Part shown: positions 13,083-46,575 of the stretch, piece by piece | Position numbering within the stretch: the first letter of the stretch is position 1 | Layout: each line of letters starts with the position of its first letter | Virus record (IMG/VR): IMGVR_UViG_3300047548_001122 | Span: 150,238-214,237 of that record | Strand: one strand, 5' to 3' | Length of the DNA: 64,000 bases | Notes under the pieces: model-generated | Databases searched by the model: none | What the model saw: only the letters and a program-made list of their open reading frames with translations | Told to the model about the DNA's origin: nothing | Translations under genes and position numbers: made by a program

Positions 13083-14312
13083 ATGAAATTTTTAGACTTT
13101 TTAGTAGAAGCCAAAAATGAAGGCGCAAATCTACACCTAGAACATCTAGAAGATAATATATTTAATTTTGGTGTAAATGGTACTCGACAATCAATTGATT
13201 TTTTAAGATCATTAAGAGATATGTTAGCAGGTCATTCACAATCAAAAGTAAATATTACAACAAAATGGGATGGAGCTCCAGCTGTTATATGTGGAATAAA
13301 TCCTGAAAACGGAAAGTTTTTTGTTGGAACAAAATCTGTTTTCAACAAAGATGGTAAATTAAATTACACCGATGATGATATTGATAAGAATCATCCTGGT
13401 GGGGGATTAAATGAGAAATTAAAAATAGCATTGGCCTTTTTACCAAAACTTGGCATCAAAGGTATATTACAAGGTGATTTGTTATTTACCAAAGGTGATA
13501 TACAATCAGAAACAATTGACGGACAAAAATATATAAAGTTTCAACCAAATACTATTGTGTATGCGGTGCCAACCGATTCAGTTATGGCTAAAAAAATGTT
13601 AGCCTCTCAAATGGGAATAGTTTTTCATACTTCTTATTCAGGAAGAACGATAGATACATTGAAAGCCTCCTTCAATATTGACATTGGAAATTTAACACAA
13701 ACTAAAGACGTTTGGTTCCGAGATGCTTCTTTTGTTGATGCGTCTGGTACTGCAACATTCACCGATAAAGAAACTCAAGCAATAACCTCTCTATTATCTC
13801 AAGCAGGTAGAGTTTTTCAAACCATAAATCCTGTCGTGTTAAATAGAATATCCTCTGGAATATTTAAAGAACAAATTAAGACATTCAATAATACAAAGAT
13901 TAGATCAGGACAAAAAATAACAAATACTGGCCAACATGTTTCAGAATTAATTAAATATATTGAAGATAAACTAAACAAAGAAATACTTGTTGCAAAAAAA
14001 GAAGATACAAAGAAGAAAAGAATTGCCGAAAAGAATGAAGTGATGAGGTTCTATAGAGGAAGTGCCAATCAATTAAAATCTGTTTTTGATTTGATGAACT
14101 TAATAGTTGATGCTAAGTTAATGATAATAAGAAAATTGGAATCAATCAAATCTTCAGTAGATACCTTTGTTAGAACAGAAGATGGTTATAGAGTTACTGG
14201 TCCAGAAGGGTTTGTGGCAGTAGATAGAATAAGTGGTGGTGCATTGAAGTTAGTTGATCGACTAGAATTTAGTCAGACCAACTTTAATGCCGCAAAAAAT
14301 TGGAGCAAATAA
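13083..14312 (+). CDS. Ligase-like nucleotidyltransferase (DUF6267-like) with capsid-targeting N-terminus
   Basis: TKWDG (motif I KxDG), QGDLLF (III), PEGFV (IV), LKLV (V); N-terminus MKFLDFLVE. Confidence 0.65.
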   Translation: MKFLDFLVEAKNEGANLHLEHLEDNIFNFGVNGTRQSIDFLRSLRDMLAGHSQSKVNITTKWDGAPAVICGINPENGKFFVGTKSVFNKDGKLNYTDDDIDKNHPGGGLNEKLKIALAFLPKLGIKGILQGDLLFTKGDIQSETIDGQKYIKFQPNTIVYAVPTDSVMAKKMLASQMGIVFHTSYSGRTIDTLKASFNIDIGNLTQTKDVWFRDASFVDASGTATFTDKETQAITSLLSQAGRVFQTINPVVLNRISSGIFKEQIKTFNNTKIRSGQKITNTGQHVSELIKYIEDKLNKEILVAKKEDTKKKRIAEKNEVMRFYRGSANQLKSVFDLMNLIVDAKLMIIRKLESIKSSVDTFVRTEDGYRVTGPEGFVAVDRISGGALKLVDRLEFSQTNFNAAKNWSK

Positions 14313-20434: not shown

Positions 20435-20889
20435 TTTCACATAGAGCTAATTTAAACGGTCCAGACCCATCAATCGAAAATAAACCTGAATCAATTGTTC
20501 ACGCTATCGATCAGGGATTTTCGGTTGAGGTTGATCTTCGAATGAAAGATCAAAAACTATATTTTGGACATGATGAAGCTCAATATGAAACTGATATTAA
20601 TTTTTTAAAGAAGTACAAACAATATCTATGGATTCATTGTAAAGAAATGGAAACCATGGAGTTTTGTCTTGAACAGGCTCTACACTGTTTCTGGCATAAC
20701 GATGATGATTATACACTGACAAATTACAGATATGTCTGGGCATACCCCGGAAAAGAACCTGTCGGCAAACTAACGATAATGGTGATGCCAGAAAGGCACT
20801 GGAGTCCAGAAGAAACCCTATCAAAAAAACCATTTGGAGTATGCACAGACTACCCTTATGCGTATCAAGATATTATAAATAAGAGATAA
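20425..20889 (+). CDS. Glycerophosphodiester phosphodiesterase-like protein
   Basis: ISHRAN..EN..VEVDL..GHD..WIHCK..GVCTDY. Confidence 0.75.
   Translation: MFIISHRANLNGPDPSIENKPESIVHAIDQGFSVEVDLRMKDQKLYFGHDEAQYETDINFLKKYKQYLWIHCKEMETMEFCLEQALHCFWHNDDDYTLTNYRYVWAYPGKEPVGKLTIMVMPERHWSPEETLSKKPFGVCTDYPYAYQDIINKR
20874..20881 (+). promoter_or_regulatory. T4 late promoter
   Basis: Exact TATAAATA 33 nt before the 914-aa ORF. Confidence 0.7.
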
Positions 20890-20914: not shown

Positions 20915-23659
20915 ATGAAATTTAAAGACTTTCTAACAGAAAAGAAAGAAGTACATGCCGTAATGGCCTTTGGGAGAATGAATCCCATAACTTCTGGCCA
21001 CGAAAAATTAGTCAACGCTGTCAAAAAAGTTGCTGCCAAAGTTGGCGGTTCACATATTATCGCACTATCACATTCTCAAGACCCAAAGAAAAATCCTCTC
21101 ACAGCCGCACAAAAAGTCAAATACGCCAAAGGTGCATTTCCTGGCACAAATTTTGTTGCTGCATCTAAAGACGCACCTACATTCTTTGAACACGCCGAAA
21201 AACTATACAAACAAGGTGTAACACATTTACATATGATTGGTGGTTCTGATCGCGTAGAAGAATATAACAAATTACTTCACAAATATAATGGCACACATAA
21301 AGGTGCTCGTTTCAATTTTAAAACCATCGAAGTACATTCTGCTGGTGAACGTGATCCTGATGCAGATGGCGTCGAAGGAATTTCTGCAAGTAAGATGCGT
21401 GAGGCAGCAAGTAAAGGAGACTTTAATACTTTTAAGAAAGGTGCTCCGTCAACAATGTCAGTCGATCTAATGAAACAAATGTATAAAGATGTACGCAAAG
21501 GTATGAACCTTAAAGAAAGTATTAATGAAGAATTTGAAGAACTTTTGATTGAAGGTGTTCACGACAAAGGTATTTTTAAAGCTGTATTTTTAGCAGGTGG
21601 TCCAGGTTCAGGTAAAGATTATGTATTGAGTAATACACTTGATGGTCATGGTTTAACTGAAATCAATTCTGATAAGGCTTTAGAATTTTTAATGGACAAA
21701 AAAGGTCTCGATAAAAGAATGCCTGCAAGTGAAACGGAAGCTAGAGATAAAGTTAGAGCTAAAGCAAAAAATGTTACAGAGCTTCGTCAAAGACTTGCAT
21801 TACAAGGAAGAAATGGACTAATCATTAATGGTACTGGTGATGATGTTGAAAAAGTAACAAGAATCAAATCTAAGTTGGAAGAATTAGGTTACGACACTTC
21901 AATGATTTTAGTGAATACGAATGATGAAGTATCTGCTCAAAGAAATATTGAACGTGGTCAAAGAGGTGGTCGCACAGTACCAGAAACCATTCGTAAAGAA
22001 AAATGGGACAATGTTCAAAATGCTCGTACTGAATATGCAAAACTTTTTTCTAATAATTATATGGAGTTTGATAACTCCGAAGATTTGAGACAAGCTCCTC
22101 CTGATGTTGTTAAAAGTAAAAAAATGGAGATGATGCAACTGTTTAAAAACGTACAACAGTTTGTTGCACAACCTCCTCAATCACCTGCTGCACAAGAGTG
22201 GGTAGCAAATGAATTAGAACAAAAAGATACTCTTAAACCACCAAAAAATGGTGTTGAACAAGTTGTACCACATGGTTCGAGTGCAGCAGAAGAAGCCAGA
22301 AAATTAGGATTACAATATTATGGTTTCGGTAGATATGGTAAAAACGGAAAAACTACACACCGTTCCATTCATGATAAACTTGTACAAGTTACTGATAAAA
22401 AACCAGAACAACCTAAACTACCTACACCTGGTTCTTCACCAATTTCAAACAAAAAAAATGTTTCAGAAGAAATTAATATTGATGAAGAATTTAACGAAAT
22501 GCTTGATTCTTTAGATGAAGATTTACGTAAATGGTTTGACCCAAAACATCCAGAAGGTGGTTGGAAAAGAATTAACTCTAAAGGTGAAGCTATAGGTCCT
22601 TGCGCTCGTGAACCAGGTGAACCAAAACCAAAATGCATGTCAAACGAAAAGAGAGCTAAGTTGAGTAAACAAGAAAGAGCTTCTGCTGTTGCTGCAAAAC
22701 GCAAACATGATCCTATTGCAGATAGATCGGGTAAAGGTGGTAAACCAGTAAACGTTTCCAATTTTGGAAAAGGTAAATTGTCTGAATCTGTAACAGTTTC
22801 AATTACTGGTGATACTGTTGATGAAGTTAAAGATTTCTTCAACACAATGGGATCAAATTTAAATACAACTACAGAACAATATGCATTATCAGATTCCAAA
22901 AAAGAATTGATAACTCTGGGTAAATTTACTCAACCATTTGGTGAGAAAATGGAAAATACCACCATTACAAATGATATGGTTGAAAATATGCTTGAACAGA
23001 AAGAACCTAATTTACTCAAAGACAAGAGTGGTAAAGTTAGGGTATTCATGTTAAGATCGGTAGCGGCTAAAGAAGCTCATACAAGTCAAGGTACAGTTTT
23101 AAAGTATAAAAACGGTTATGTCGTTAAACTAAAAGAGGAGATTGAAGATGTTGAAGTTTATAAAGGAACTATTCGGAATTGGATTGAAGAATCCAGAAAA
23201 ACATGGATTGGAGGGAGCAACCAGAGCACCCAACGAGGACTTCTCACAGAGAGTGGAACAATATCAAACGGAAGTTCCGAAGGTAGAGGAACCGAAAGTA
23301 GAAGAATTGAAAGTGGAGAAACCAAAGAAGAAACAACCATCCAAGAAGCCTGCGAAAATAACTCCACAACCGCAACCAAAAAAATCACCCTCGCAGAAAT
23401 CAAACAGAGGCAGAAAGCCAAACACCAAAAACAAATCGACGAAATAGATCGAGGTATTGAACCTGGCATATCAATGGCTGGTGCTGGCGAAGGCATCGGC
23501 CGTGATATGGGTGAAAAAATTAAAAAAAGGTCACATAAAGTTACTGTTGTTGAATTAACTGGTGATGAAACAACAGCATCTATTGGTGACCAAAAAGAAG
23601 ATGAGTTAAAGAAAAAAGGTATCTCACTAACTACATTTAAAAAGAGAAACTACATATGA
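20915..23659 (+). CDS. Multidomain polyprotein: HIGH-type nucleotidyltransferase + zeta-toxin/PNK-like P-loop kinase + small modules
   Basis: MKFKDFLTE N-terminus; FGRMNPITSGH..GSDR..ISASKMR; LAGGPGSGK..INSD..RGGRTVP; acidic linkers LKESINEE, LLIE, SLDE, KLSE. Confidence 0.8.
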   Translation: MKFKDFLTEKKEVHAVMAFGRMNPITSGHEKLVNAVKKVAAKVGGSHIIALSHSQDPKKNPLTAAQKVKYAKGAFPGTNFVAASKDAPTFFEHAEKLYKQGVTHLHMIGGSDRVEEYNKLLHKYNGTHKGARFNFKTIEVHSAGERDPDADGVEGISASKMREAASKGDFNTFKKGAPSTMSVDLMKQMYKDVRKGMNLKESINEEFEELLIEGVHDKGIFKAVFLAGGPGSGKDYVLSNTLDGHGLTEINSDKALEFLMDKKGLDKRMPASETEARDKVRAKAKNVTELRQRLALQGRNGLIINGTGDDVEKVTRIKSKLEELGYDTSMILVNTNDEVSAQRNIERGQRGGRTVPETIRKEKWDNVQNARTEYAKLFSNNYMEFDNSEDLRQAPPDVVKSKKMEMMQLFKNVQQFVAQPPQSPAAQEWVANELEQKDTLKPPKNGVEQVVPHGSSAAEEARKLGLQYYGFGRYGKNGKTTHRSIHDKLVQVTDKKPEQPKLPTPGSSPISNKKNVSEEINIDEEFNEMLDSLDEDLRKWFDPKHPEGGWKRINSKGEAIGPCAREPGEPKPKCMSNEKRAKLSKQERASAVAAKRKHDPIADRSGKGGKPVNVSNFGKGKLSESVTVSITGDTVDEVKDFFNTMGSNLNTTTEQYALSDSKKELITLGKFTQPFGEKMENTTITNDMVENMLEQKEPNLLKDKSGKVRVFMLRSVAAKEAHTSQGTVLKYKNGYVVKLKEEIEDVEVYKGTIRNWIEESRKTWIGGSNQSTQRGLLTESGTISNGSSEGRGTESRRIESGETKEETTIQEACENNSTTATKKITLAEIKQRQKAKHQKQIDEIDRGIEPGISMAGAGEGIGRDMGEKIKKRSHKVTVVELTGDETTASIGDQKEDELKKKGISLTTFKKRNYI
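23148..23447 (+). CDS. Nested +1-frame Lys/Pro-rich small protein
   Basis: GAGGAG SD 7 nt before ATG 23148; MLKFIKELFG amphipathic start, VEEPK repeats, basic tail. Confidence 0.55.
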   Translation: MLKFIKELFGIGLKNPEKHGLEGATRAPNEDFSQRVEQYQTEVPKVEEPKVEELKVEKPKKKQPSKKPAKITPQPQPKKSPSQKSNRGRKPNTKNKSTK

Positions 23660-24183
23660 AGTCATTTACTCAATTCATAAACGAAGAAGTTGAAATTCTG
23701 GATGAAATGCCTGGTGCCAATATGGACACCAGAGCGGTTCATCAACATCTGAAAAAACAAGGATGGAAATTAACCAGAAGTTCTGGCAATCATGATGTGT
23801 TTACTCATCCAGATGCTAAACATCACATTCCCGTTCCTCGTCACAAACAATTGAAAGCTCCTTTAGTTCGTGGTATCTTAAAACAAGCTAAAGTAAATGA
23901 AGAAGTTGAATTGGATGAAACTGCTGCATGGCAACGTAAAGAAGGTAAAAATCCTGAAGGTGGATTAAACCGTAAAGGTATCGAATCGTATCGCCGTGAA
24001 AATCCTGGTTCTAAACTATCGATGGCTGTAACTACTCCTCCATCAAAACTAAAACCAGGTTCAAAGGCTGCAAAGAGAAGAAAATCCTTTTGTGCAAGAA
24101 TGGGTGGTATGCCTGGTCCAATGAAGGATGAAAAAGGTCGTCCAACAAGAAAAGCATTATCTTTGCGTAAATGGAACTGCTAA
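23656..24183 (+). CDS. Capsid-targeted two-module protein: HicA-family toxin domain + KSFCARM module
   Basis: MKSFTQFINE; LKKQGWKLTRSSGNHDVFTHP..IPVPRH..LVRGILKQA (HicA); EEVELDE linker; AAWQRKEGK..RKSFCARM..LRKWNC. Confidence 0.8.
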   Translation: MKSFTQFINEEVEILDEMPGANMDTRAVHQHLKKQGWKLTRSSGNHDVFTHPDAKHHIPVPRHKQLKAPLVRGILKQAKVNEEVELDETAAWQRKEGKNPEGGLNRKGIESYRRENPGSKLSMAVTTPPSKLKPGSKAAKRRKSFCARMGGMPGPMKDEKGRPTRKALSLRKWNC

Positions 24184-25482
24184 ATGGCACAGTTTAGAAC
24201 CGACAAAAACATTATCGATTCGGGTCAAGTATTTACTCGATATGAGATAATGATGTTATCTGATAGGCTGACACCATCTGGTACAGCCACAGATGCGTTC
24301 GGTCGTTTACGTGTTGCTGAACCACATACTCTTTTTGATTCACAACATCAAGACGTTGAAAATGATAAATGGGATACACTCATTACAGGTTCGGGCACCA
24401 AAACACATTTACCAAATGAATCTGTAATTGCTTTAGAAATTGGTACTGCAAATAACGATGGTATTATTCGTGAAACACTAAGAACAATGCCATACCAACC
24501 AGGCAAATCATTGTTGATTATGAGCACATTTGCTATGGGACAACCAAAAGCGAACGTTGTTCAGAGAGTAGGATATTATGGAGCAAATAACGGAATTTAT
24601 TTTGAAAACGATTCTGGAAATAACTATGTTGTATTAAGAAGTTCTGTTACAGGAAATGTTGTAGAAACTAGAGTTGCACAAACAAATTGGAATGTGGATA
24701 AATTTGATGGTACGGGATATTCGAGTCAGGGAACAGGACCAGAACACGTTGATGGAATAAATGTAAACAAATCAAATCTTTTTTGGATTGATATTGAATG
24801 GCTAGGCGTTGGTGATGTTCGATGTGGTTTTTTGAATGACGGCCTATTAAAAACTGCACACATATTTCATAACGACAATAAAAACAATACAACTTATATG
24901 CGTAGTGCAATTCAACCATTGCGATATGAAATATTTAACAAAGGTGTTACAACATCAAATACGCTGATGCGTCAAATTTGTTCTACAGTCATATCCGAAG
25001 GTGGTTATACACAAATTAATCAATCAAGGTCAGCATCAAATCCTTTGGCTGGTAAAAACTTAACTGTTAGTATTAATAACCCAATGGTAAGCCTTCGGTT
25101 AAAAAATGGTAGAACAAATGCTGTCGTTGTACCTGTTGCAATTGATATGTATGGATTACAAGCAACAGCATTTAAATATAGAGTGTATGAGAATGTCACA
25201 AGTTTAACCGGTCCATCATGGGTTACAACCGACGCCGCAAGTGCAGTTGAGTATGATATATCGGCAACGGCAATGACTGGTGGAACTTTACTTAAAGAAG
25301 GTATTTTCAAAGGATTAGAAGTTGCAAAAGAAGTTAATTTGTTACAACTATTAGATGGTGTTATACAACTAACAAGAAAAATAAATGCAAACACTGGCGA
25401 CATATTCACGGTTGCAATAGAACCAACAACAAACAACGATGATGCTATCGTAGCATTATCATGGCAAGAACACATTAATTAA
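24184..25482 (+). CDS. Probable virion structural protein (beta-rich)
   Basis: DAFGRLRV..YQPGKSLL..EWLGVG..ICSTVISEGG pattern in late region. Confidence 0.6.
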   Translation: MAQFRTDKNIIDSGQVFTRYEIMMLSDRLTPSGTATDAFGRLRVAEPHTLFDSQHQDVENDKWDTLITGSGTKTHLPNESVIALEIGTANNDGIIRETLRTMPYQPGKSLLIMSTFAMGQPKANVVQRVGYYGANNGIYFENDSGNNYVVLRSSVTGNVVETRVAQTNWNVDKFDGTGYSSQGTGPEHVDGINVNKSNLFWIDIEWLGVGDVRCGFLNDGLLKTAHIFHNDNKNNTTYMRSAIQPLRYEIFNKGVTTSNTLMRQICSTVISEGGYTQINQSRSASNPLAGKNLTVSINNPMVSLRLKNGRTNAVVVPVAIDMYGLQATAFKYRVYENVTSLTGPSWVTTDAASAVEYDISATAMTGGTLLKEGIFKGLEVAKEVNLLQLLDGVIQLTRKINANTGDIFTVAIEPTTNNDDAIVALSWQEHIN

Positions 25483-25497
25483 AAATAGGAGACTCAA

Positions 25498-26904
25498 ATG
25501 TTTCAAGACAAACTAACAAGAGAAATTGCTGCAGCTGCTGCACAAATCAAAACAGAACCACCAAAGAATGAAGTTAATTCTGAGTCTGTTGAGGGTGCAG
25601 TCGTTTCTGTTATGACGAATGAAGAACTAAAAGGCAATCAACACAAGATTGATGCTAACAAAAACGGCAAAGTTGATGCACATGACTTTAAACTTCTTCG
25701 TGCCAAGAAAGGTAAAACGGTAGAAGAAGGCATTAAAGGTGCTGGTATAGGTGCTGCTGTAGGTTCTGTTGCTGGTGGACCGATTGGTGCAGCAGTTGGT
25801 GGTGCTTTGGGGCATGTAGCAGGTGAAGTTCTATCAAGTGCTAAGAATAAAACAAAAGCTATGTATCGTATTGCAAAAGGTCCTTCGATGGCCGACAGCA
25901 AAATAAAGAAAGAAGAAGTTGAAGAACTCGATGAATTGTTTGGAAAAGGTAAATTACCAGCAATTGCAGCATATCACAAAGAAAAAGGTGCTGAAGCTAA
26001 AGGTAAGATGGAAACAATTAGAAGTGGTAACACTAAACTTCCTGTTCCAAAATCTACATCTGCTAAAATCTTTTCTAAAGATGCTGAAGCTAAATATCAT
26101 TCAACTCAGGAGAAAAGAGCAAAATCTTTGATGAAAAAAGAAGAAGTTGAATCCGTTGAAGAGGGATTTGGTGATCTAGTTAAAGGTATTAAACGTGTCG
26201 TTGCCGGTAAAAAGAGTCCTAGTGCCGTAAGAGATGCACACTTAGCAAAATCTGCTTTTAGTACAGATCCGAAAGTTAAAGAGCGTGAAGGTCGCCGTTA
26301 CGATAAAGTGGATAACTTCATGATGAAAAAAGAAGAAACGGAATTGGATGAAGCCTTTCCAACTGTAGCTGATGCTAGAAAACGTATGGCTGCAAAAGAA
26401 AGTGGTTTCGAGAAAAAGAAAATTTCTACTGGTACAGTTTACTCACGTAAGTATAAGGCAGAACCAGAAGAGAATGATGAAGCGCCAAAGAAAAAGGCCA
26501 AGACCATGAAAGAAATGTTGAGTATCTATTCAGCAGGTGGCGCCGAAGCTTTGGTAGAAAATCTCATGATCGAAGAACCATCACAAGATGAATATAAAAA
26601 GGAAGTTGAAACTGCTCAGGCAAAAGCTGACGGTAAAATTCGTAACGATAAAGGTATAGCTAAAGCAGCATCACAGGGTGTAAAGATGGAAGAAGTTGAA
26701 ATTGAAGTTCTTGATGCAGATGAAATCAATGGAGTTCAGATTGACAATATTGAAGAGCGCCACATGACTGATGCTGAAATGGATAAACGTGAAGAAATCG
26801 TTAAGTCAATGAAAAAAGGTATTCAAGGTTTCAAAGATCGTTATGGCGATAAAGCAAAAAATGTAATGTATGCTACTGCAACCAAATTGTCCAAAAAGGA
26901 TTAA
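25498..26904 (+). CDS. Modular polyprotein with repeated KKEEVExxxE linkers (putative head internal protein)
   Basis: EF-hand-like DANKNGKVDAHD, glycine zipper and several basic modules separated by acidic linkers. Confidence 0.7.
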   Translation: MFQDKLTREIAAAAAQIKTEPPKNEVNSESVEGAVVSVMTNEELKGNQHKIDANKNGKVDAHDFKLLRAKKGKTVEEGIKGAGIGAAVGSVAGGPIGAAVGGALGHVAGEVLSSAKNKTKAMYRIAKGPSMADSKIKKEEVEELDELFGKGKLPAIAAYHKEKGAEAKGKMETIRSGNTKLPVPKSTSAKIFSKDAEAKYHSTQEKRAKSLMKKEEVESVEEGFGDLVKGIKRVVAGKKSPSAVRDAHLAKSAFSTDPKVKEREGRRYDKVDNFMMKKEETELDEAFPTVADARKRMAAKESGFEKKKISTGTVYSRKYKAEPEENDEAPKKKAKTMKEMLSIYSAGGAEALVENLMIEEPSQDEYKKEVETAQAKADGKIRNDKGIAKAASQGVKMEEVEIEVLDADEINGVQIDNIEERHMTDAEMDKREEIVKSMKKGIQGFKDRYGDKAKNVMYATATKLSKKD

Positions 26905-26906
26905 AC

Positions 26907-28334
26907 ATGAAGAAGATGTCTGACGTTTTCAAATCCATTCGTTTTGCCAAAATGGACCCAAAACACGATAAGCCCGAAATTGGTGGTTCGAAAGATGACG
27001 AGGAACATTATACTGTTGGTGAAAAGGAATATGAACAACAGGTAAAACATGTAAAAAAGCGTGCTATGCAAGAAGAAAAGAAAGACAAATATGATGAAGG
27101 TGAATATGACCGAGAAGGCGATATGGCTAAATCTGATCTTCGTTCTATCATTGCAAATGCAAAAAGATTGCATGATATGATCGAAGATTCGGCTAACCTT
27201 CCTGAATGGGTGCAGTCTAAAATTACTGTTGCTGAAGATTATATTTCTACAGTTGCTAATTATATGACATCAGAAATGAGTGAAGGGGTATCTGATAAGT
27301 TGTACAAATCTCATCAAGATTTGCGTAAGAAGAGTGGGTTACCTCATCCCGATTACTACAAAGCATTAGGTAAATCTTATGACATTGAAGATGATAAAGA
27401 ACGCCTTACACATCAATCTGAATTAAAGAAAAAATATGGTGTGAAAGAAGAGGTTGAACTTGAAGAGTCCTCTAAATTTGCAAAAATTTTTGATAAGAGA
27501 GTCAAACAAAGAGAACTCAATAAATTACCTAAAGAACCAAAAGGTGAATATGAACGTAAAGTGGACAAGTATTTGAAGAAGAAATATAACAAAGAAGAAG
27601 TTGAACTTCAAGAAGGTCGTCCATCACAACGCCATCCATTAGAGGGTCATGAGTATCACAAAAAGTCTAATGAAGAATTGATTGGTATTGCTAAAGATGC
27701 ACATGCGGCTGCTGAAGCAATGAAGGGTCACAGTACCAGAGCAGAAAACAAATATCGTGACCAAGCAAATGATTCTGCAACAGTACGTTATTTCCGACAA
27801 AAGAGTGGTATGCCTGACTGGTACAAAAAGAAGTATGGTCATGTCAAAGAAGGAGTAGAACTTGAAGAGGGTTTACAACAAACTCTTAGAAAAGTTGTTC
27901 CTGGTTATGCAAAGAAACAAATAAACGATAAAATGGACCGTGAAAAGTTTGGTAGAAGAGATGTGGATAAAGACGAGAATTATTATCGTTATAAAAAAGT
28001 CCTCGACAAATTAAAAAAAGAAGATGTTGAACAATTAGAAGAAAAGAATGTTCCAACTTCTCCAGAAAAATGGGCTCAAGCCAAAGCACAAGCAAAGGCC
28101 AAGTTTGACGTTTATCCTTCTGCCTATGCAAATGGTTGGGCTGCAAAGAAATATAAAGCAATGGGTGGTGGTTGGAAATCAGTCAGTGAAGAATCTATTT
28201 TAGAGTCTCGTAAGGCTGAAATTGTCAAAAAGATAGTTAAGAGTAAAAAAACTAATAGTGATGATAAATTTGAACCTAACCCTATCATGTCGAAAGATGA
28301 AGATAGGGGCAGAGATAACATAAATAACAAGTAA
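26907..28334 (+). CDS. Modular polyprotein with repeated KEEVELxE linkers (putative head internal protein)
   Basis: EGDMAKS..LPEWVQSKIT module, HPLEGHEYH module, YPSAYANGW..GGGWK module; four KE(E/G/D)VE(Q)LxE linkers. Confidence 0.7.
   Translation: MKKMSDVFKSIRFAKMDPKHDKPEIGGSKDDEEHYTVGEKEYEQQVKHVKKRAMQEEKKDKYDEGEYDREGDMAKSDLRSIIANAKRLHDMIEDSANLPEWVQSKITVAEDYISTVANYMTSEMSEGVSDKLYKSHQDLRKKSGLPHPDYYKALGKSYDIEDDKERLTHQSELKKKYGVKEEVELEESSKFAKIFDKRVKQRELNKLPKEPKGEYERKVDKYLKKKYNKEEVELQEGRPSQRHPLEGHEYHKKSNEELIGIAKDAHAAAEAMKGHSTRAENKYRDQANDSATVRYFRQKSGMPDWYKKKYGHVKEGVELEEGLQQTLRKVVPGYAKKQINDKMDREKFGRRDVDKDENYYRYKKVLDKLKKEDVEQLEEKNVPTSPEKWAQAKAQAKAKFDVYPSAYANGWAAKKYKAMGGGWKSVSEESILESRKAEIVKKIVKSKKTNSDDKFEPNPIMSKDEDRGRDNINNK
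28319..28326 (+). promoter_or_regulatory. T4-type late promoter
   Basis: CATAAATA before ORF 28359. Confidence 0.5.
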
Positions 28335-34357: not shown

Positions 34358-37300
34358 ATGACACAAAAAATATCCTCAGTAAACATTGAAGCTGCGACAC
34401 TGGCATCTTTTTCTGGACCAACAATTGCAAATGTTTCTATTGCGAATTCAACATATACAATATTAGATGATACAGCAGTTTCAAATGCTGGAGGTTATGT
34501 CGTCATCACTGGTAGTAACTTTCAATCAGGCGCTCAAGTTTTATTTGGAAGCACTTCAGCATGTACGGTTACTTTTGTAGATTCGACTCAACTGAATGTT
34601 CAAGTTCCCGCATTAACATCTGGTAGTTATGTGGTGTATGTACAAAATGGTGATGGTTCAACAGCAATTAAATTAAATGGTATTACATCAAGTCCAATAC
34701 CAGTTTGGTCAACAGATAGTACTTTAACACAACAAGATTCTGGCGCAGTAATTAGTATTTCTTTGGCAGCACCATCCGATTCAAATGTTACATATTCTCT
34801 TGCACAAGGAAGTTCTTTACCAAGTGGAACCACACTAGCAGCAAATGGATTGTTTAGTGGTACAGTTACAATAGAAAATGAAACGACTTACAATTTTACG
34901 GTTAATGCAATCGATGATGAAAATCAAGATGCTTCGAGGTCGTTTAGTATCACAATTGCAACTGGAGACCCATACTACTATCTCACAACTCTACATTTAT
35001 CCGGCGAAACACCCGCAAATAATTGGTTAACTGATGTAAGTACAAATAATTTTGCATTAACTGTAAATGGTGATGCAAAGCCAACATCATTTAGTCCATA
35101 TGAAACCAATTGGGGCGTTTACTTCGATGGATCGGATGATTATGTTTATGCAGCAGCAAACGCTGCCTTTGATTTACCTGGAGATTTCACAATCGAATGT
35201 TGGGCTAATTTTAGCAATTTAGGAGGAAACAGATTACTAATTGATACTTATATTGCTGGAGATAATGCATCTTATCAGTTATACTGGAGAACCACAGGAA
35301 GTTCAATCGTATTTTATACTCCTGGTGATGGCGTCATTTTACAGGATCCATCATCCTCAACAGTTGTGATAAACAAGTGGTATCATATTGCTGTTGTAAG
35401 AAGTGGTACAACAGCAAAACTTTATATTGATGGTCAAGAAAAAGCGTCAGCAACACTGACTAGAGATTTAACACATGGAAATGATCTTGCGTTAGGTATT
35501 CAGAAAACTTCACTTACTAATGATTTAACTGGATATATTTCTAACGTTCGTATTGTAAAAGGTACGGCGGTCTATACCTCAAACTTCACACCATCAACAT
35601 CACCATTAACAGCAATATCAGGTACAACTTTCTTGGCATGTCAATCCAATAGATTTGTTGACAATAGCACTAATAACCTTCCTCTTATTGTTAGTGGCAC
35701 AGTAAATACAACTAGTTATGGTCCATTTACAGAAACAGATTTAGTAACTGGTAGTGCATATTTTGATGGTTCTGGAGATTATTTAACTGCTTCTGCTAAC
35801 TCCAGTTTAGCTATGGGAACAGGAGATTTTACAGTAGAATTTTGGATCAATCTTAATGTATCTCAATCATCAGATGTTATTACTTTATCCCCCGGCGGTT
35901 GGTCGATTATTCTGTTCTCGGGAGATTTGTATTTTCAAACAGGTCGCGGCGGCGGAAGTTTAAATAATTATTTCACTGTAGGAACATATATTCCATATAA
36001 ATCTTGGGGACACGTTGCATATGTTAGGTCTGGTGGTACTGGAAGATTTTATGCGAATGGTGTAGCGGTGGGAACGCCTGTTGCCGACTCTACGAATTAT
36101 TCTTCAACACAAACTTCTGTTTTAATAGGCGGAGGTGCAAGTCCTGCTTACGGAGCATTAGCAGGTTATATTTCAAACATTCGCATAGTAAAAGGTGTTG
36201 CTTTATATACCGGCAACTTTACACCTCCTGTAAACACTTTAGTTCTAACTGGATCATCACCTTACTCCAATACAACAAACGTAAACACTACATTTAGTTC
36301 ATCTAACACCAGTCTGCTAACACTACAAAACAGATTTGGTGAAAACAATAATCGTTTTGTTGATACATCTGGAACCAATAATATTATTACAAGAGTTGGC
36401 AATTCAACACAAGGTACATTTAGTCCGTTCAGTAAAACTGGTTGGAGTAATTATTTTGATGGTACAGGAGATTATGTTACATTTTCTAACTCATCACAAT
36501 TTGCATTTGGCACAGGACCATTTACCATTGAATTTTGGATTAATGCTCCTTTAAATAATGATAAGTTTATTTTAGGAGGAAGAACCGCAATCGGAACGAT
36601 GCATATTACTACTGGAGGTTTTAGTAGTACCGCTGGAGTTTTAAGATATGTTGGTTCGTCAACGATTGTAAGCTCGAATGTTATCACTGACAATACATGG
36701 CACCATTGTGCAATAGTTCGAGATGGAAGTAATAACATTACATTATACGTGGATGGCGTATCTGTTGGAACTGGAACTGATACTACAAACTATACTACTA
36801 CTAGTGGAGAATGGAAAATTGGATCAAATGATAATTTTGCCGGTAGTAATTTACTAACAGGTTATTTGTCCAATATGCGTATCATAAAAGGTACCGCACT
36901 TTATACATCCACATTCACACCATCAACAACTTCACTAACAGCAATTGCAAACACTAGTCTATTAACGTGTCAATCAAATCAATTTGCTGATAGTAGCAAC
37001 AACAATTTAACTTTAACTGTCAATGGTAATCCTAGCGTTCAACCATTCAGTGCATTTAAACCAACTTCTGAATGGTCATTAAGTACAGTTGGTGGTAGTA
37101 TGTATTTTGATGGGTCTGGAGATTATTTGTCGTGTCCAAACAATGCAAATTTAAATCCAAACACTAATGATTTTATTATGGAAGCTTGGGTTTACATTAC
37201 TGGAACAACAGGGTCGAATCAAGGATTTAATGGAAAAGGAACAGCGGGTACCGATGGATACAGTTTTTACATAACAAATTCTCTTGTTCTGTCTTTCATA

Positions 37301-38257
37301 TGGAATGGAACAGGAGGAGCAACAATCACAGCTGGAACATTAAAATTGAACAATTGGCATCATGTAGCTGTAGTTAGAAACAGTGATGTCATTCGACTAT
37401 ATTTGGATGGCGTTGGTGCAGGTAGTTCTACTAGTTGCACCACAGATATAACCACCACCGGTATAAAATATATTGGACAAGCAAGAGGTGCCAATGTAAT
37501 GAAAGGATACATGTCGGGTTATCGAATGATAAAAGGTAATTTGCCAGCTGGTTATGATGCAACATCTAGCACCATCACTGTTCCGCCAGCGCCACCAGAA
37601 GTAGTTAAATCATCTTCTCTAATACTTGGTGGAACTAATGGTGGCATTATAGATTATACAACAAAAAATAATTATGAAACTGTAGGTAATGTACAGCTGA
37701 GAAATAACATTGTAAAGTATGGAAATAGTTCAATGTATTTTGATGGAAATGGAGATTTTCTTTTACTTGGAAACACAAATCTAATAACATTTAATGGTTC
37801 TTCCACATTCACAGTAGAAGGATGGTTTTATCAAACTGCATATGATTCTACCTCAGGATTTATGAATAATGTGGTAGGAGACTTAACACCAAATGGCACT
37901 TATGGTGATGCGCTTTATTGGTCAATAGGTATGAATTCAGCAAATAAACCTGCCATTAGATGGTATGGAGGTCCTACGGTGTGTGATGCTACGAATGCTT
38001 TATCTTTGAATACGTGGAATCATGTTGCTTGGGTTGTGAGTAATGGAGCAGTTAAAATTTTCATAAATGGTGTACAAGAAACTTTAACGGGTACAACAAC
38101 TATAACAGCCGCAGCAGGTTCAGTGGGATATCTTGTTCTTGGCGCTGATAGGGGAAAATATTATACTGGTTATATTGACGATCTTCGCATTACTAATGGA
38201 TATGCACGTTATACATCCAACTTTACGCCGCCAACAACAGCATTCAAATTAAAATAA
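34358..38257 (+). CDS. Large adhesin: Ig/TIG domains + five LamG/concanavalin-A-like repeats
   Basis: Five YFDGxxD[YF] .. W[YGHN]H[IVC]A.V .. GY..xxRI repeats; N-terminal TIG and Ig-like domains. Confidence 0.85.
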   Translation: MTQKISSVNIEAATLASFSGPTIANVSIANSTYTILDDTAVSNAGGYVVITGSNFQSGAQVLFGSTSACTVTFVDSTQLNVQVPALTSGSYVVYVQNGDGSTAIKLNGITSSPIPVWSTDSTLTQQDSGAVISISLAAPSDSNVTYSLAQGSSLPSGTTLAANGLFSGTVTIENETTYNFTVNAIDDENQDASRSFSITIATGDPYYYLTTLHLSGETPANNWLTDVSTNNFALTVNGDAKPTSFSPYETNWGVYFDGSDDYVYAAANAAFDLPGDFTIECWANFSNLGGNRLLIDTYIAGDNASYQLYWRTTGSSIVFYTPGDGVILQDPSSSTVVINKWYHIAVVRSGTTAKLYIDGQEKASATLTRDLTHGNDLALGIQKTSLTNDLTGYISNVRIVKGTAVYTSNFTPSTSPLTAISGTTFLACQSNRFVDNSTNNLPLIVSGTVNTTSYGPFTETDLVTGSAYFDGSGDYLTASANSSLAMGTGDFTVEFWINLNVSQSSDVITLSPGGWSIILFSGDLYFQTGRGGGSLNNYFTVGTYIPYKSWGHVAYVRSGGTGRFYANGVAVGTPVADSTNYSSTQTSVLIGGGASPAYGALAGYISNIRIVKGVALYTGNFTPPVNTLVLTGSSPYSNTTNVNTTFSSSNTSLLTLQNRFGENNNRFVDTSGTNNIITRVGNSTQGTFSPFSKTGWSNYFDGTGDYVTFSNSSQFAFGTGPFTIEFWINAPLNNDKFILGGRTAIGTMHITTGGFSSTAGVLRYVGSSTIVSSNVITDNTWHHCAIVRDGSNNITLYVDGVSVGTGTDTTNYTTTSGEWKIGSNDNFAGSNLLTGYLSNMRIIKGTALYTSTFTPSTTSLTAIANTSLLTCQSNQFADSSNNNLTLTVNGNPSVQPFSAFKPTSEWSLSTVGGSMYFDGSGDYLSCPNNANLNPNTNDFIMEAWVYITGTTGSNQGFNGKGTAGTDGYSFYITNSLVLSFIWNGTGGATITAGTLKLNNWHHVAVVRNSDVIRLYLDGVGAGSSTSCTTDITTTGIKYIGQARGANVMKGYMSGYRMIKGNLPAGYDATSSTITVPPAPPEVVKSSSLILGGTNGGIIDYTTKNNYETVGNVQLRNNIVKYGNSSMYFDGNGDFLLLGNTNLITFNGSSTFTVEGWFYQTAYDSTSGFMNNVVGDLTPNGTYGDALYWSIGMNSANKPAIRWYGGPTVCDATNALSLNTWNHVAWVVSNGAVKIFINGVQETLTGTTTITAAAGSVGYLVLGADRGKYYTGYIDDLRITNGYARYTSNFTPPTTAFKLK

Positions 38258-45452: not shown

Positions 45453-45564
45453 ACTAAATATGAAGTCTGATTATCTTCGATGGTCGGACTATTAAAAAAA
45501 ATTTCAAATTGTGACAATCCCGTTACAGTTGAATTGTTTTAGTAGTCTAACCATAGGAGATAAT
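45453..45564 (+). promoter_or_regulatory. Late-type promoter plus structured pstS leader
   Basis: ACTAAATA, hairpin 45464-45490 and long hairpin 45486-45548 sharing GGACT; SD AGGAG at 45555. Confidence 0.55.
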
Positions 45565-46575
45565 ATGAAGAAGTTTTTAACATCTTTTCTATTCGCAGTA
45601 TCTTCAGTTGCATCGGCAGTAGATATAACTGGAGCAGGCGCAACATTTCCATTTCCAATCTATGCAAAGTGGGCTGAAGCATACAAAGCACAAACTGGCA
45701 TTGGTCTGAATTATCAATCAATAGGTTCAGGTGGTGGCATCAAACAAATCAAATCAAAAACAGTTGATTTTGGTGCCTCTGACATGCCGTTGAAATTAGA
45801 AGAACTTGATAAAGAAGGTCTTGTACAATTCCCAGCAATTATTGGTGGTGTTGTTCCCGTAGTAAATGTTGAAGGTGTTAAACCTGGACAATTGAAATTA
45901 ACAAGTGAAATTATCTCATCGATTTATCTGGGCAAAATTACAAAATGGAATGATAAATTAATCGTAGATTTAAATCCTGATGTAAAATTACCCAACCAAA
46001 GTATTACAGTTGTGCATCGTTCAGATGGTTCCGGCACTACATTTCTATTCACAAATTGGTTGAGCAAAACTAATAGTGATTGGAAAACAAATGTAGGTGA
46101 AGGCACCGCTGTAAAATGGCCTACAGGTATTGGTGGTAAAGGTAATGAAGGTGTTGCGTCGATGATTATGCAAGCAAAAGGTAGTATTGGTTATGTAGAA
46201 TATGCATACGCTAAAAAGAATAAGTTGTCACACACATTATTGAAGAATCGTGATGGTAAATTTGTGGAACCTGATGATGAAACATTCAAATCTGCAGCAA
46301 GTAATGCAGAGTGGTCGACAACAAATGGAATGTATAACATATTAACCGATCAAAGTGGAAAAAATAGTTGGCCAATTACAGGAGCATCTTATATCTTAAT
46401 GCATCGCCAACAACAAGATCCACTAGTCGGCAAAGCAGTTTTAAAGTTTTTTAGTTGGGCGTATAACAATGGTTCTGGAATGGCGACAGAATTAGATTAT
46501 GTGCCTTTACCAAAAGAAGTAGTATCAAAAGTCCGTGTGGAGTGGACAAAATTTAACCTAGGAGAAATTAAATGA
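45565..46575 (+). CDS. pstS: Phosphate ABC transporter substrate-binding protein
   Basis: Signal peptide; GAGATFP, GSGGG, DFGASD, RSDGSGTT, GYVE, WPI; ATG with SD at 45565. Confidence 0.97.
   Translation: MKKFLTSFLFAVSSVASAVDITGAGATFPFPIYAKWAEAYKAQTGIGLNYQSIGSGGGIKQIKSKTVDFGASDMPLKLEELDKEGLVQFPAIIGGVVPVVNVEGVKPGQLKLTSEIISSIYLGKITKWNDKLIVDLNPDVKLPNQSITVVHRSDGSGTTFLFTNWLSKTNSDWKTNVGEGTAVKWPTGIGGKGNEGVASMIMQAKGSIGYVEYAYAKKNKLSHTLLKNRDGKFVEPDDETFKSAASNAEWSTTNGMYNILTDQSGKNSWPITGASYILMHRQQQDPLVGKAVLKFFSWAYNNGSGMATELDYVPLPKEVVSKVRVEWTKFNLGEIK

What the first reader, a model, noticed from the sequence alone, without database searches (positions are those of the whole stretch)
23656..24183. Orphan HicA toxin domain flanked by cleavage linkers behind a capsid-targeting peptide
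Seen: MKSFTQFINE-EVEILDE | LKKQGWKLTRSSGNHDVFTHP..IPVPRHKQLKAPLVRGILKQA | EEVELDE | a second module (..RKSFCARM..LRKWNC). Established: this is the HicA dsRBD-fold mRNA interferase pattern, with the catalytic G-x-H His. No HicB antitoxin is recognisable in the window. Inference: an RNase released by protease processing and injected with the genome for host shut-off, or a decoy acting on host HicB / TA defences. Fusion to the precursor might keep it inactive during synthesis.
Basis: partly seen in the sequence, partly recalled or inferred. Interest (0 to 1): 0.78.

Follow-up and report, generated by a model that had tools for sequence, protein, structure and literature searches.

The report
HicA RNase cassette in phage head-protein precursor
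A freshwater T4-like phage encodes an intact HicA toxin-type RNase with no antitoxin, built into a small late protein that carries a T4-style head-targeting peptide and protease-site linkers, so the RNase is probably packed into the virion and delivered with the DNA, an untested variant of T4's internal proteins.

Summary
Window 23656-24183 (+) is an intact 175-aa ORF. It consists of a 10-aa N-terminal peptide (MKSFTQFINE), an acidic linker, a HicA module (aa 18-88) and a DUF6321 module (aa 89-175).

**HicA identity.** Pfam scores 49.7 bits against a cutoff of 27. The predicted fold's six best PDB matches are all HicA toxins. The G-x-H histidine (H46) is invariant in the aligned relatives. dN/dS is about 0.1.

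**Genome context.** The complete 214-kb genome has no HicB. It does encode a T4 gp21-type prohead protease, a scaffold and a gp67-like core protein.

**Module borders.** All three (L/I)-x-E motifs of the protein lie exactly at module borders. The border before HicA is [LIV]-x-E in 49 of 49 relatives. Relatives exist with the N-terminal peptide joined directly to DUF6321, so HicA plus its linker is a discrete cassette.

**Expression.** The gene lies in a tightly packed operon behind a TATAAATA late-promoter motif, next to a virion-protein homologue.

**Best reading (about 0.5).** This is a T4-type internal-protein precursor that the prohead protease cuts into two small basic proteins, which are ejected with the DNA. 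HicA then cleaves host RNA. Packaging, cleavage and RNase activity are inferred, not shown.

**Novelty.** New variant of a known kind. I found no literature describing it.

The parts
20874..20881 (+). TATAAATA, a T4-type late-promoter motif 33 nt upstream of the ATG of the first gene of the cluster
   Evidence: The window has only 3 exact copies (7.4 expected by chance). The genome has 9, and 5 of them lie 22-33 nt upstream of a gene start, including the scaffold gene next to the prohead protease. The scan found only one weak + strand terminator-like site before 29829, at 21290 inside the 914-aa ORF.
20915..23659 (+). 914-aa modular protein that starts with MKFKDFLTE (targeting-peptide-like, ending L-T-E). 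It carries a cytidylyltransferase-like module, a Zeta-toxin/AAA_33 P-loop kinase module and further modules separated by acidic linkers. Its stop overlaps the start of the HicA gene (ATGA).
   Evidence: Pfam Zeta_toxin E 3.1e-12 and AAA_33 5.5e-8. PHROG cytidyltransferase E 4e-64. N-terminal motif. The same gene precedes the HicA gene in relatives.
23656..24183 (+). The 175-aa precursor ORF of the finding
   Evidence: 52 metagenomic clusters share its HicA module.
23656..23685 (+). aa 1-10, MKSFTQFINE: capsid-targeting-sequence-like propeptide ending in I-N-E
   Evidence: 5 of 10 residues are identical and 7 of 10 similar to T4 IPII/IPIII MKTYQEFIAE. The same kind of start occurs on 45 of 149 DUF6321 proteins, against 4 of 222 genes of this genome. 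pLDDT is below 50.
23686..23706 (+). aa 11-17, EVEILDE: acidic linker ending in L-D-E, the predicted cleavage site directly before the HicA module
   Evidence: [LIV]-x-E stands at this place in 49 of 49 relatives, and E17 is invariant. The model is disordered here.
23707..23919 (+). aa 18-88: HicA module. The core is aa 18-80 (pI about 11), with catalytic H46 at 23791-23793. The trailing linker VNEEVELDE runs from 23893 to 23919 and ends in L-D-E.
   Evidence: Pfam. PDB profile hits 4c26, 6g26, 1whz, 9svk. AF2 gives helix, three strands, helix at pLDDT 78-88. Foldseek's top six hits are all HicA, with TM-score up to 0.85 and rmsd 1.1-1.6 A. dN/dS is 0.08-0.18. Relatives' contigs skip about 23686-23921.
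23920..24180 (+). aa 89-175: DUF6321 module, basic (pI 11.1), with three predicted helices and invariant W, SFC.RM and a C-terminal WNC
   Evidence: Pfam E 3.3e-23. 3386 representative clusters match at E<=1e-3, nearly all through this part, mostly at the C-terminal end of the match and at 53-94% identity. In the Atlas the clusters are made up of viruses only. No PDB fold match. Stand-alone podovirus versions begin at the same TAAWQRK.
24184..25482 (+). 432-aa homologue of a cyanomyophage / HMO-2011 'virion structural protein', abutting the HicA gene (TAAATG)
   Evidence: phrog_1645, E 1.9e-102. About 39-42% identity to S-RIM8, S-RIM12 and HMO-2011 proteins annotated as virion structural.
25498..28334 (+). 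Two further linker-rich 'beads on a string' proteins (468 and 475 aa) of the same operon. In other phages, orthologues of the second one carry the HicA cassette.
   Evidence: Linkers KEEVEELDE, KEETELDE, KEEVELEE, KEEVELQE, KEGVELEE and EDVEQLEE. P0020, P0037, P0042 and P0050 join modules of this gene to HicA.
13083..14312 (+). 409-aa DUF6267 protein that starts with MKFLDFLVE: a third gene of the window with the targeting-peptide-like start
   Evidence: The best cultured relative is Methylophilales phage Melnitz-3, 48.8% identity over the full length.

Best explanation
The gene encodes a T4-type internal (head-packaged) protein precursor into which a HicA endoribonuclease cassette has been inserted.

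Proposed course of events:
1. The gene is made late, from an operon with virion genes.
2. The N-terminal decapeptide MKSFTQFINE takes the precursor into the prohead core.
3. The phage's gp21-type prohead protease cuts after the Glu of the (L/I)-x-E motifs at E10, E17 and E88.
4. This frees a 71-aa HicA (aa 18-88) and an 87-aa DUF6321 protein. Both are very basic and stay with the packaged DNA.
5. At the next infection they are ejected with the DNA. HicA then cleaves host RNA before any phage gene is expressed, either for host shut-off or to remove a defence RNA.
6. Sequestration in proheads, and possibly the acidic linker, would limit damage to the producing cell, which would explain why no HicB is needed.

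Shown here: HicA identity, fold and catalytic His. Purifying selection. Absence of HicB. Presence of protease, scaffold and core protein. Exact coincidence of conserved (L/I)-x-E sites with module borders. The cassette nature of HicA. A late-promoter motif and a packed operon.

Inferred: targeting, cleavage, packaging, ejection, RNase activity and its target.
For: **HicA identity**
- Pfam 49.7 bits against cutoff 27.
- The family profile hits PDB HicAs, with H46 on the catalytic His.
- The AF2 fold's top six PDB matches are all HicA, TM-score up to 0.85.
- 31 invariant residues in the 20-sequence HicA-module alignment, including G44 and H46.
- dN/dS is 0.08-0.18 at saturated dS.

**Orphan status**
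- No HicB in the complete genome.
- No HicB family on record for any called neighbour of four syntenic relatives.

**Targeting and processing machinery**
- S77 protease: Pfam E 3.2e-35, phrog_207 E 1.4e-72. Scaffold: phrog_237. gp67-like core protein starting MKLINLILE.
- The phage's own gp23 keeps L-T-E|A at the place of T4's Glu65|Ala66 site.
- T4 gp21 cuts after L/I-X-E, and the first 10 aa of IPIII are sufficient for head targeting (PMC9026906, read).
- T4 IPII and IPIII start with MKTYQEFIAE.

**Borders**
- All 3 [LI]xE motifs lie at module borders.
- 49 of 49 relatives have the motif before HicA and 50 of 50 after it. 57 of 72 unrelated upstream contexts have it just before DUF6321.
- The linkers have pLDDT below 50.
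- The predicted mature N-terminus TAAWQRK matches the start of stand-alone DUF6321 proteins.

**Cassette**
- P0110 and P0212 are the targeting peptide joined directly to DUF6321.
- Relatives' contigs skip about 23686-23921.
- HicA sits in different genes of the same cluster in other phages.

**Late expression**
- TATAAATA lies 33 nt upstream of the operon.
- The DUF6321 homologue PHM2_112 of cyanophage P-HM2 is classed Late (PMC5082946, supplement file 3).

**Product properties**
- The mature products are IP-like: 8.2 and 9.5 kDa, pI 10-11.
Against: - There are no virion proteomics for this uncultured phage.
- The Syn9 DUF6321 protein gp114 is not marked as a structural virion protein in its record, although its neighbours are.
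- DUF6321 also occurs as a stand-alone late protein in T7-like podoviruses (P-GSP1) and in small pelagiphages (Greip). There it has no targeting peptide, so DUF6321 itself does not need the T4 route.
- (L/I)-x-E is a very short motif, and acidic linkers could simply be flexible spacers.
- An RNase precursor made late could harm the phage's own late mRNAs unless it is inactive or quickly sequestered. Nothing here shows either.
- The model gives no confident packing between modules (pTM 0.36), so there is no evidence for cis-inhibition.
Confidence: 0.5

Rival explanations
1. It is a late cytoplasmic polyprotein that is never packaged. The modules act in the producing cell late in infection, for example by degrading residual host or early phage mRNA or by timing the switch to late functions. 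The acidic stretches are only flexible spacers or sites for some other protease.
For: Syn9 gp114 is not flagged as structural. DUF6321 works as a stand-alone late protein in podoviruses that lack the targeting peptide. There is no direct evidence of packaging.
Against: The N-terminal decapeptide is enriched about 17-fold on DUF6321 proteins compared with other genes of this genome, and it resembles the tested T4 targeting sequence. [LIV]xE is conserved exactly at every border, even where the upstream modules are unrelated. The gene abuts a virion-protein homologue.
Confidence: 0.22
2. It is a packaged but non-catalytic nucleic-acid binder. The dsRBD-like HicA fold and DUF6321 serve as small basic DNA- or RNA-binding internal proteins, for charge neutralisation or protection of the DNA on entry, as proposed for the T4 IPs. 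Neither acts as an RNase.
For: Both modules have pI about 11 and are IP-sized. HicA has a double-stranded-RNA-binding-domain-like fold.
Against: The catalytic G-x-H histidine and the other HicA signature positions (THP, VPRH) are invariant under strong purifying selection. A mere polycation would not need them.
Confidence: 0.13
3. It is a counter-defence decoy or competitor. The phage HicA binds host HicB or otherwise interferes with a host HicAB abortive-infection system, or it cleaves a specific defence RNA rather than bulk mRNA.
For: TA systems are known phage defences, and phages are known to encode antitoxin mimics (general knowledge, restated in PMC12619734). Other cargo modules in the same frame look effector-like: Zeta kinase, Pol-beta NTase, deaminase and RMF.
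Against: Titrating HicB would free the host toxin, which does not obviously help a phage. No close cellular HicA relative exists that would point to mimicry of a host protein. The host is unknown.
Confidence: 0.08
4. It is an ordinary type II toxin with an unrecognised antitoxin encoded nearby, acting as an addiction or superinfection-exclusion module.
For: Antitoxins are diverse and can escape profile searches.
Against: The genome is that of a lytic T4-like phage. The gene is translationally coupled on both sides to large conserved late genes, with no small partner ORF. The module moves between genes without any constant neighbour except the linker.
Confidence: 0.04

Closest known systems
T4 internal proteins IPI, IPII, IPIII (and Alt): prohead-core-targeted, gp21-processed, ejected proteins
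   Same: - A 10-aa N-terminal peptide of the same pattern ending in (L/I)-x-E.
- A gp21-type protease, scaffold and gp67-like core protein in the genome.
- Small, very basic predicted mature products.
- Hypervariable cargo behind a conserved targeting peptide.
- Signs of late expression.
   Different: - The mature parts share no sequence homology with the T4 IPs.
- The precursor is a multi-module string with internal sites, giving two or more products from one chain. T4 IPs lose only the propeptide.
- The cargo is a TA-type RNase, not an anti-restriction inhibitor or an ADP-ribosyltransferase.
- The phage belongs to the aquatic cyanophage / Melnitz-like branch of T4-like phages.
- Packaging is not demonstrated.
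HicAB type II toxin-antitoxin systems (HicA mRNA interferases; PDB 6g26, 4c26, 1whz, 5yrz, 4p78)
   Same: The Pfam family, the fold, the G-x-H catalytic histidine and the size of the excised module (about 70 aa).
   Different: - There is no HicB anywhere in the genome.
- The module is embedded in a larger late phage protein between protease-type linkers.
- It forms a distinct subfamily with no close stand-alone relatives and about 30% identity to the solved HicAs.
Polyvalent proteins of phages and conjugative elements (Iyer et al. 2017, PMC5512222)
   Same: Several conflict-type modules sit in one polypeptide in a virion-gene context, predicted to be delivered with the DNA and processed proteolytically.
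   Different: - That paper does not mention HicA, Zeta toxin or cyanophages.
- Polyvalent proteins typically carry their own zincin-like peptidase. Here no peptidase domain was found, and the sites fit the prohead protease acting in trans.
- These proteins are much smaller and are framed by a targeting peptide and DUF6321.
MuF polymorphic toxins of temperate phages (Jamet et al. 2017, PMC5576092)
   Same: A variable toxin module is attached to a conserved head-associated part and is presumed to be injected.
   Different: There is no MuF domain and no immunity gene, and the phage is a lytic T4-like one. HicA is not mentioned in that paper.

Membership tests
HicA toxin family (PF07927) | Profile match above the curated threshold | tested here: met
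   49.7 bits against cutoff 27, E 3.9e-13. The six-frame genome search gives 52.4 bits.
HicA toxin family (PF07927) | dsRBD-like fold: helix, three strands, helix | tested here: met
   AF2 gives H25-34, E38-43, E46-50, E57-61 and H68-78 at pLDDT 78-88. The Foldseek top six hits are all HicA, with TM-score up to 0.85 and rmsd 1.1-1.6 A.
HicA toxin family (PF07927) | Catalytic histidine in the G-x-H motif | tested here: met
   H46 aligns with position 24 of 4c26 (the H24A mutant), with GGH of 1whz and with GSH of 9svk. It is invariant in both family alignments.
HicA toxin family (PF07927) | Ribosome-independent RNA cleavage | not testable with these tools
   Needs an enzyme assay.
HicAB type II toxin-antitoxin operon | Adjacent or co-encoded HicB antitoxin | tested here: not met
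   PF15919 and PF05534 give no hit at E<=1 in the complete 214-kb genome, while control genomes do give hits. No HicB family is on record for any called neighbour in the relatives.
T4-type internal (head-packaged, gp21-processed) proteins | N-terminal capsid targeting sequence of about 10 aa ending in (L/I)-x-E | tested here: met
   MKSFTQFINE against T4 MKTYQEFIAE: 5 identical, 7 similar. This is resemblance only. Function is untested.
T4-type internal (head-packaged, gp21-processed) proteins | gp21-type prohead protease and prohead core in the same genome | tested here: met
   Peptidase_S77 E 3.2e-35. phrog_207, phrog_237 and phrog_1064.
T4-type internal (head-packaged, gp21-processed) proteins | Small basic mature product | tested here: met
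   HicA 8.2 kDa with pI 9.8 (core 11.2). DUF6321 9.5 kDa with pI 11.1.
T4-type internal (head-packaged, gp21-processed) proteins | Late expression | tested here: inconclusive
   A TATAAATA motif lies 33 nt upstream of the operon. The P-HM2 DUF6321 homologue is classed Late. There are no transcript data for this phage. RNA-library contigs come from relatives only and may be DNA carry-over.
T4-type internal (head-packaged, gp21-processed) proteins | Presence in virions and ejection into the host | not testable with these tools
   The phage is uncultured. The Syn9 gp114 record carries no structural flag.
T4-type internal (head-packaged, gp21-processed) proteins | Homology of the mature part to IPI, IPII or IPIII | tested here: not met
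   Pfam and PHROG scans return only HicA, DUF6321 and unknown-function families. IPs are hypervariable, so this is not strictly required.
Polyvalent proteins (Iyer et al. 2017) | Two or more conflict/effector domains in one polypeptide in a virion or transfer context | tested here: inconclusive
   HicA is one such domain. DUF6321 has no known function. The upstream 914-aa protein has cytidylyltransferase-like and Zeta-kinase modules.
Polyvalent proteins (Iyer et al. 2017) | Embedded peptidase (for example zincin-like MPTase) for self-processing | tested here: not met
   No peptidase family was found in any of the five cluster proteins.
MuF polymorphic toxins | N-terminal MuF head domain with a C-terminal toxin and an immunity gene | tested here: not met
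   There is no MuF hit and no small downstream immunity ORF.

The most novel reading that the evidence does not exclude
Aquatic T4-like phages have a general, undescribed cassette system for virion-delivered effectors. A T4-type targeting decapeptide sits at the N-terminus and the near-invariant basic DUF6321 module at the C-terminus. Between them, interchangeable effector 'beads' are strung, each bounded by (L/I)-x-E prohead-protease sites. The beads seen so far are HicA RNase, Zeta-type kinase, nucleotidyltransferases, a deaminase, ribosome modulation factor and many unknowns. One polyprotein would therefore be cut inside the head into a cocktail of small proteins that is injected with the DNA. 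HicA would then be the first case of a TA toxin used by a lytic phage as a pre-packaged weapon.
Probability: 0.4. Interest if true: 0.8.

Novelty: new variant of a known kind. Interest (0 to 1): 0.62.

Why it matters
- **Reach of the internal-protein paradigm.** If true, the T4 internal-protein paradigm extends to the abundant aquatic T4-like phages (cyanomyophages, pelagi- and methylophage relatives). There, thousands of 'hypothetical' DUF6321 proteins would get a common explanation.
- **A toxin used by a lytic phage.** A classical toxin-antitoxin RNase would be deployed without an antitoxin, kept harmless by packaging and processing rather than by a partner protein.
- **A rule for annotation.** The pattern targeting peptide ... 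(L/I)-x-E | cargo | (L/I)-x-E | S/T-AAW gives a sequence rule for predicting virion-delivered effectors and their mature ends in metagenomes.
- **Testable in culture.** Cultured models exist that carry the frame, though not the HicA cassette: S-RIM8, Syn9, P-HM2 and Melnitz.

Tried and rejected
- **Close phage relatives of the locus by DNA.** The search found only a 113-bp match.
- **HicA part against 50,697 phage records.** The only hit was an unrelated Bifidobacterium phage YcfA gene, so no cultured phage in that collection has this cassette.
- **Stand-alone relatives of the excised module.** Only two short fragments turned up.
- **Literature.** The polyvalent-protein paper and the MuF toxin paper do not mention HicA. 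'Capsid targeting sequence' plus cyanophage gives only a T4 review. DUF6321 appears in no paper. A 2025 paper on large aquatic phages concerns another lineage and HicB-like antitoxins.
- **Fold of DUF6321.** No PDB match. AlphaFold DB matches are only its own kin. Its function stays unknown.
- **NCBIfam.** It added nothing.
- **RNA runs.** None holds this phage. Relatives' contigs in RNA libraries mostly cover DUF6321 and cannot prove transcription.
- **Structure prediction.** It was unavailable twice. I removed those rows altogether.
- **Not attempted.** A protease-substrate complex prediction, because I judged it too unreliable for a short linear motif to change the verdict.
- **Rejected idea.** That DUF6321 is a cis-antitoxin. 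HicA occurs without it in at least ten clusters.


Full report
**The sequence.** Its ATG overlaps the stop of the upstream 914-aa ORF (ATGA). Its stop abuts the ATG of the next ORF (TAAATG). Pfam finds two domains: HicA_toxin at aa 28-79 (E 3.9e-13, 49.7 bits, curated cutoff 27) and DUF6321 at aa 97-173 (E 3.3e-23).

The window is the last 64 kb of a 214,237-bp virus contig with direct terminal repeats, judged complete. It comes from a freshwater metagenome. The phage is T4-like. It has a family-B DNA polymerase of the T4 type, helicase, primase, ribonucleotide reductase and a PstS-like gene. It also has a head module with portal, a gp67-like core protein, a Peptidase_S77 (gp21-type) prohead protease, scaffold and gp23. 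Its best cultured relatives for neighbouring genes are cyanomyophages and Methylophilales phage Melnitz.

**Is it a real HicA?** Yes.
- A profile of the family matches solved HicA toxins: 4c26 at E 4.9e-5, then 6g26, 1whz and 9svk. H46 of G44-N45-H46 lies on the catalytic histidine, which is the H24A position of 4c26.
- An AlphaFold2 model on a 57-row alignment gives helix, three strands, helix for aa 25-78 at pLDDT 78-88.
- The six best PDB matches by Foldseek are all HicA: 6g26, 1whz, 4c26, 5yrz and 4p78. The TM-score by target reaches 0.85 and the rmsd is 1.1-1.6 A.
- Fifty-two metagenomic clusters carry the same module. In an alignment of 20 of them, 31 positions are invariant, including G44, H46, T50-H51 and V60-P61-R62-H63.
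- dN/dS between four loci is 0.08-0.18 with saturated synonymous sites.

The module is therefore a functional, selected HicA. It forms a subfamily of its own. A search with the excised module found only two short fragments. No other phage in a 50,697-record collection has it apart from an unrelated Bifidobacterium phage gene.

**Is it an orphan?** Yes. Neither HicB Pfam model hits the complete genome at E<=1, while both give hits in control genomes. In four syntenic relatives no called neighbour has a HicB family on record.

**The N-terminal peptide.** T4 IPII and IPIII, translated from the T4 record, both begin MKTYQEFIAE|A. T4 gp24 begins MAKINELLRE|S and gp22 MLKEQLIAE|A. The review PMC9026906 states three things:
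- gp21 cuts C-terminal to Glu in the short motif L/I-X-E.
- The first 10 residues of IPIII suffice for incorporation into the head.
- This capsid targeting sequence may be the way T4-like phages load varied proteins.

The ORF here begins MKSFTQFINE|E, which is 5 of 10 identical and 7 of 10 similar. A loose pattern for such a start matches only 4 of 222 genes of this genome. The four are this gene, the upstream 914-aa gene (MKFKDFLTE), the DUF6267 gene at 13083 (MKFLDFLVE) and the gp67-like prohead core gene (MKLINLILE). The same pattern matches 45 of 149 representatives of DUF6321-bearing proteins from the 1.8-billion-protein library. Examples are MKTWKDIIAE, MKINEIITE and MRANEFITE. The parts that follow those starts are unrelated to one another. 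A cultured cyanomyophage, S-RIM8, has a 108-aa protein starting MKSYNEFISE in the same slot, directly upstream of the homologous 'virion structural protein'.

**The linkers.** The protein has three [LI]-x-E motifs, against 1.2 expected from composition. All three lie at module borders: I-N-E10, L-D-E17 and L-D-E88. None lies inside HicA or DUF6321.
- In the HicA family the three residues before the module's M(P/A)GANM are [LIV]-x-E in 49 of 49 sequences, and Glu is invariant.
- In 50 of 50 sequences a [LIV]-x-E follows within 16 residues of the last helix.
- In DUF6321 proteins whose upstream modules are unrelated, 57 of 72 have [LIV]-x-E ending 0-2 residues before the AAW that opens the domain, and Glu stands at position -2 in 50 of 72.
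- The linkers are the only low-confidence parts of the model, with pLDDT below 50 at aa 1-20 and 82-88.
- The predicted mature start T89-AAWQRK matches where the stand-alone DUF6321 protein of pelagiphage Greip begins, MAK-TAAWQRK.
- The phage's own major capsid protein keeps L-T-E|A where T4 gp23 is cut at Glu65|Ala66. The protease specificity is therefore probably conserved.
- Genome-wide, the stereotyped acidic linker [KN]EE[VT]E..L.E is confined to four adjacent genes, 20915-28334, apart from one looser match at genome 86318.

**HicA is a cassette.**
- Minimal proteins exist that are just the decapeptide plus DUF6321: P0110 (MKSFKEYLIE|TAAWTRKEGKNP) and P0212 in locus L022.
- In L022 that minimal gene occupies the slot behind the Zeta-kinase gene. 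HicA sits four genes downstream as a separate gene with its own start, MNSFKEHIEQLEE|MPGANMD.
- In other clusters HicA is inserted into orthologues of the 475-aa gene at 26907 (P0020, P0037, P0042, P0050). It is combined there with a Gly-zipper module, a small CW..G..VPNCVP module or an SfsA-like nuclease fragment.
- Contigs of relatives laid on the window skip from about 23686 to 23921. That is 78 codons, equal to aa 11-88. One contig carries SEAWTRKEGQSE directly behind the decapeptide.

The unit 'linker plus HicA' is thus bounded exactly by the two predicted cleavage sites.

**DUF6321.**
- 3386 representative clusters match the protein at E<=1e-3, nearly all through this part. It is mostly at the C-terminal end of proteins of 130-1214 aa, at 53-94% identity.
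- In the Atlas its clusters consist only of viruses.
- It is basic (pI 11.1) and predicted to have three helices. It has no PDB fold match.
- In phage records it occurs in 533 genomes. Most are cyanomyophages, but it is also a stand-alone protein of about 80 aa, without the decapeptide, in the T7-like podovirus P-GSP1 and in the small pelagiphage Greip.
- Among 95 long DUF6321 proteins the recognisable cargo modules are DUF5661 (9), HicA (3), Zeta toxin/AAA_33 (2), a cytidine deaminase, a Pol-beta nucleotidyltransferase, ribosome modulation factor and HEAT repeats. Most cargo is unknown.

**Timing.** An exact TATAAATA, the T4 late-promoter core, lies 33 nt upstream of the ATG at 20915. The genome has nine exact copies. 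Five of them lie 22-33 nt upstream of gene starts, including the scaffold gene. On the + strand the scan finds only one weak terminator-like site before 29829, at 21290 inside the 914-aa ORF. The five genes are packed with overlaps or gaps of at most 15 nt. In cyanophage P-HM2 the DUF6321 gene PHM2_112 lies between gp16 and gp17 and was classed Late in infection experiments (PMC5082946, supplement file 3).

**Mechanism.** The best-supported reading is a T4-type internal-protein precursor. It is made late and targeted to the prohead core by the decapeptide. The gp21-type protease cuts it after E10, E17 and E88 into a 71-aa HicA and an 87-aa DUF6321 protein. Both are basic, are retained with the DNA and are ejected at the next infection, where HicA cleaves host RNA. 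I put this at about 0.5 overall. By step:

| Step | Confidence |
|---|---|
| HicA identity and integrity | about 0.95 |
| Processing at the borders | about 0.7 |
| Packaging | about 0.6 |
| Early RNase action in the new host | about 0.45 |

**Weaknesses.**
- There are no proteomics for this phage.
- Syn9 gp114 is not flagged as structural.
- DUF6321 also works without the T4 route in podoviruses.
- The cleavage motif is very short.
- It is not explained how the producing cell tolerates the precursor.
- The model shows no confident contact between modules (pTM 0.36).

The rival explanations are a non-packaged late polyprotein (0.22), a non-catalytic basic nucleic-acid binder (0.13), a decoy or specific counter-defence role (0.08) and a conventional toxin with a hidden antitoxin (0.04).

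**Comparison with what is known.**
- It works like T4 IPs and Alt. It meets the testable family features: targeting-type start, protease and core present, small basic products. It is not homologous to them in the mature part, and it differs in being a multi-module string.
- It is a member of the HicA family, but not of a HicAB operon.
- It resembles polyvalent proteins (PMC5512222) and MuF toxins (PMC5576092) in concept. It lacks their defining peptidase or MuF parts, and neither paper mentions HicA.

I found no paper that links HicA or DUF6321 with head targeting. I file it as a new variant of a known kind, with interest 0.62.

Noticed in passing
window 20915-23659: The 914-aa upstream protein starts with a targeting-peptide-like MKFKDFLTE. 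It combines a cytidylyltransferase-like module (aa 7-205) with a Zeta-toxin/AAA_33 P-loop kinase (aa 222-370), and then a Cys-motif module (KWF..GGW..G.C..PKC) of the kind also seen in S-RIM8 and Syn9 gp114. The nucleotidyltransferase-plus-kinase pairing recalls NadR-type NAD salvage enzymes (from memory). That idea was not tested.
   Followed up: partly
window 13083-14312: A DUF6267 protein (409 aa) also begins with a targeting-peptide-like MKFLDFLVE|A. In PHROG 455 this domain is fused to the cytidylyltransferase. In P-SSM4 the genes corresponding by position and size (PSSM4_154 and PSSM4_155) are adjacent. The best cultured relative is Melnitz-3, 48.8% identity including the N-terminus.
   Followed up: partly
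window 25498-28334: Two K/E-rich proteins consist of short conserved modules: a Gly-zipper, an EF-hand/dockerin-like loop and a DUF5661-like FDVYPSAYANGW module. The modules are separated by 7 stereotyped KEEVE.L.E linkers. They could be further polyprotein cargo, or scaffold-like core proteins that get chopped up as T4 gp22 is.
   Followed up: partly
P0055-P0203 (representatives): DUF6321 is a near-invariant C-terminal module of thousands of aquatic phage proteins. About 30% of the representatives start with a T4-like targeting decapeptide, and most have Glu two residues before the domain's AAW. As far as I could find, this frame is undescribed.
   Followed up: yes
L010:6671-6997 (Synechococcus phage S-RIM8, NC_020486 94105-94431): A 108-aa hypothetical protein of a cultured cyanomyophage starts with MKSYNEFISE, almost the T4 IP targeting sequence. 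It sits between the DUF6321 protein gp114 and the virion structural protein. This is a ready experimental model for the targeting hypothesis.
   Followed up: partly
P0037 (284 aa, ENA metagenome): In this relative the HicA cassette is followed by a fragment matching the SfsA restriction-endonuclease-like domain (E 1.7e-7). This is another nuclease-type module in the same string.
   Followed up: no
members of alignment A6: Single DUF6321 proteins carry a ribosome modulation factor domain, a cytidine/dCMP deaminase domain or a Pol-beta nucleotidyltransferase domain. These cargo types would fit host-takeover effectors.
   Followed up: no
window 23686-23921, RNA-library contigs: Contigs of relatives in four aquatic metatranscriptome libraries pile up on the DUF6321 part (23920-24180). 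Several skip the HicA cassette exactly. One 275-nt contig covers the HicA module at about 82% identity. DNA carry-over cannot be excluded.
   Followed up: partly
window 45511-46572 and 40817-42613: A PstS-like phosphate-binding auxiliary gene (phrog_5385) and a class I ribonucleotide reductase large subunit. Both are ordinary for aquatic T4-like phages.
   Followed up: no
window 34358-38257: A 1299-aa protein with five repeated domains matches 'virion structural protein / baseplate wedge' PHROGs. It is probably a fibre or baseplate-attached adhesin.
   Followed up: no
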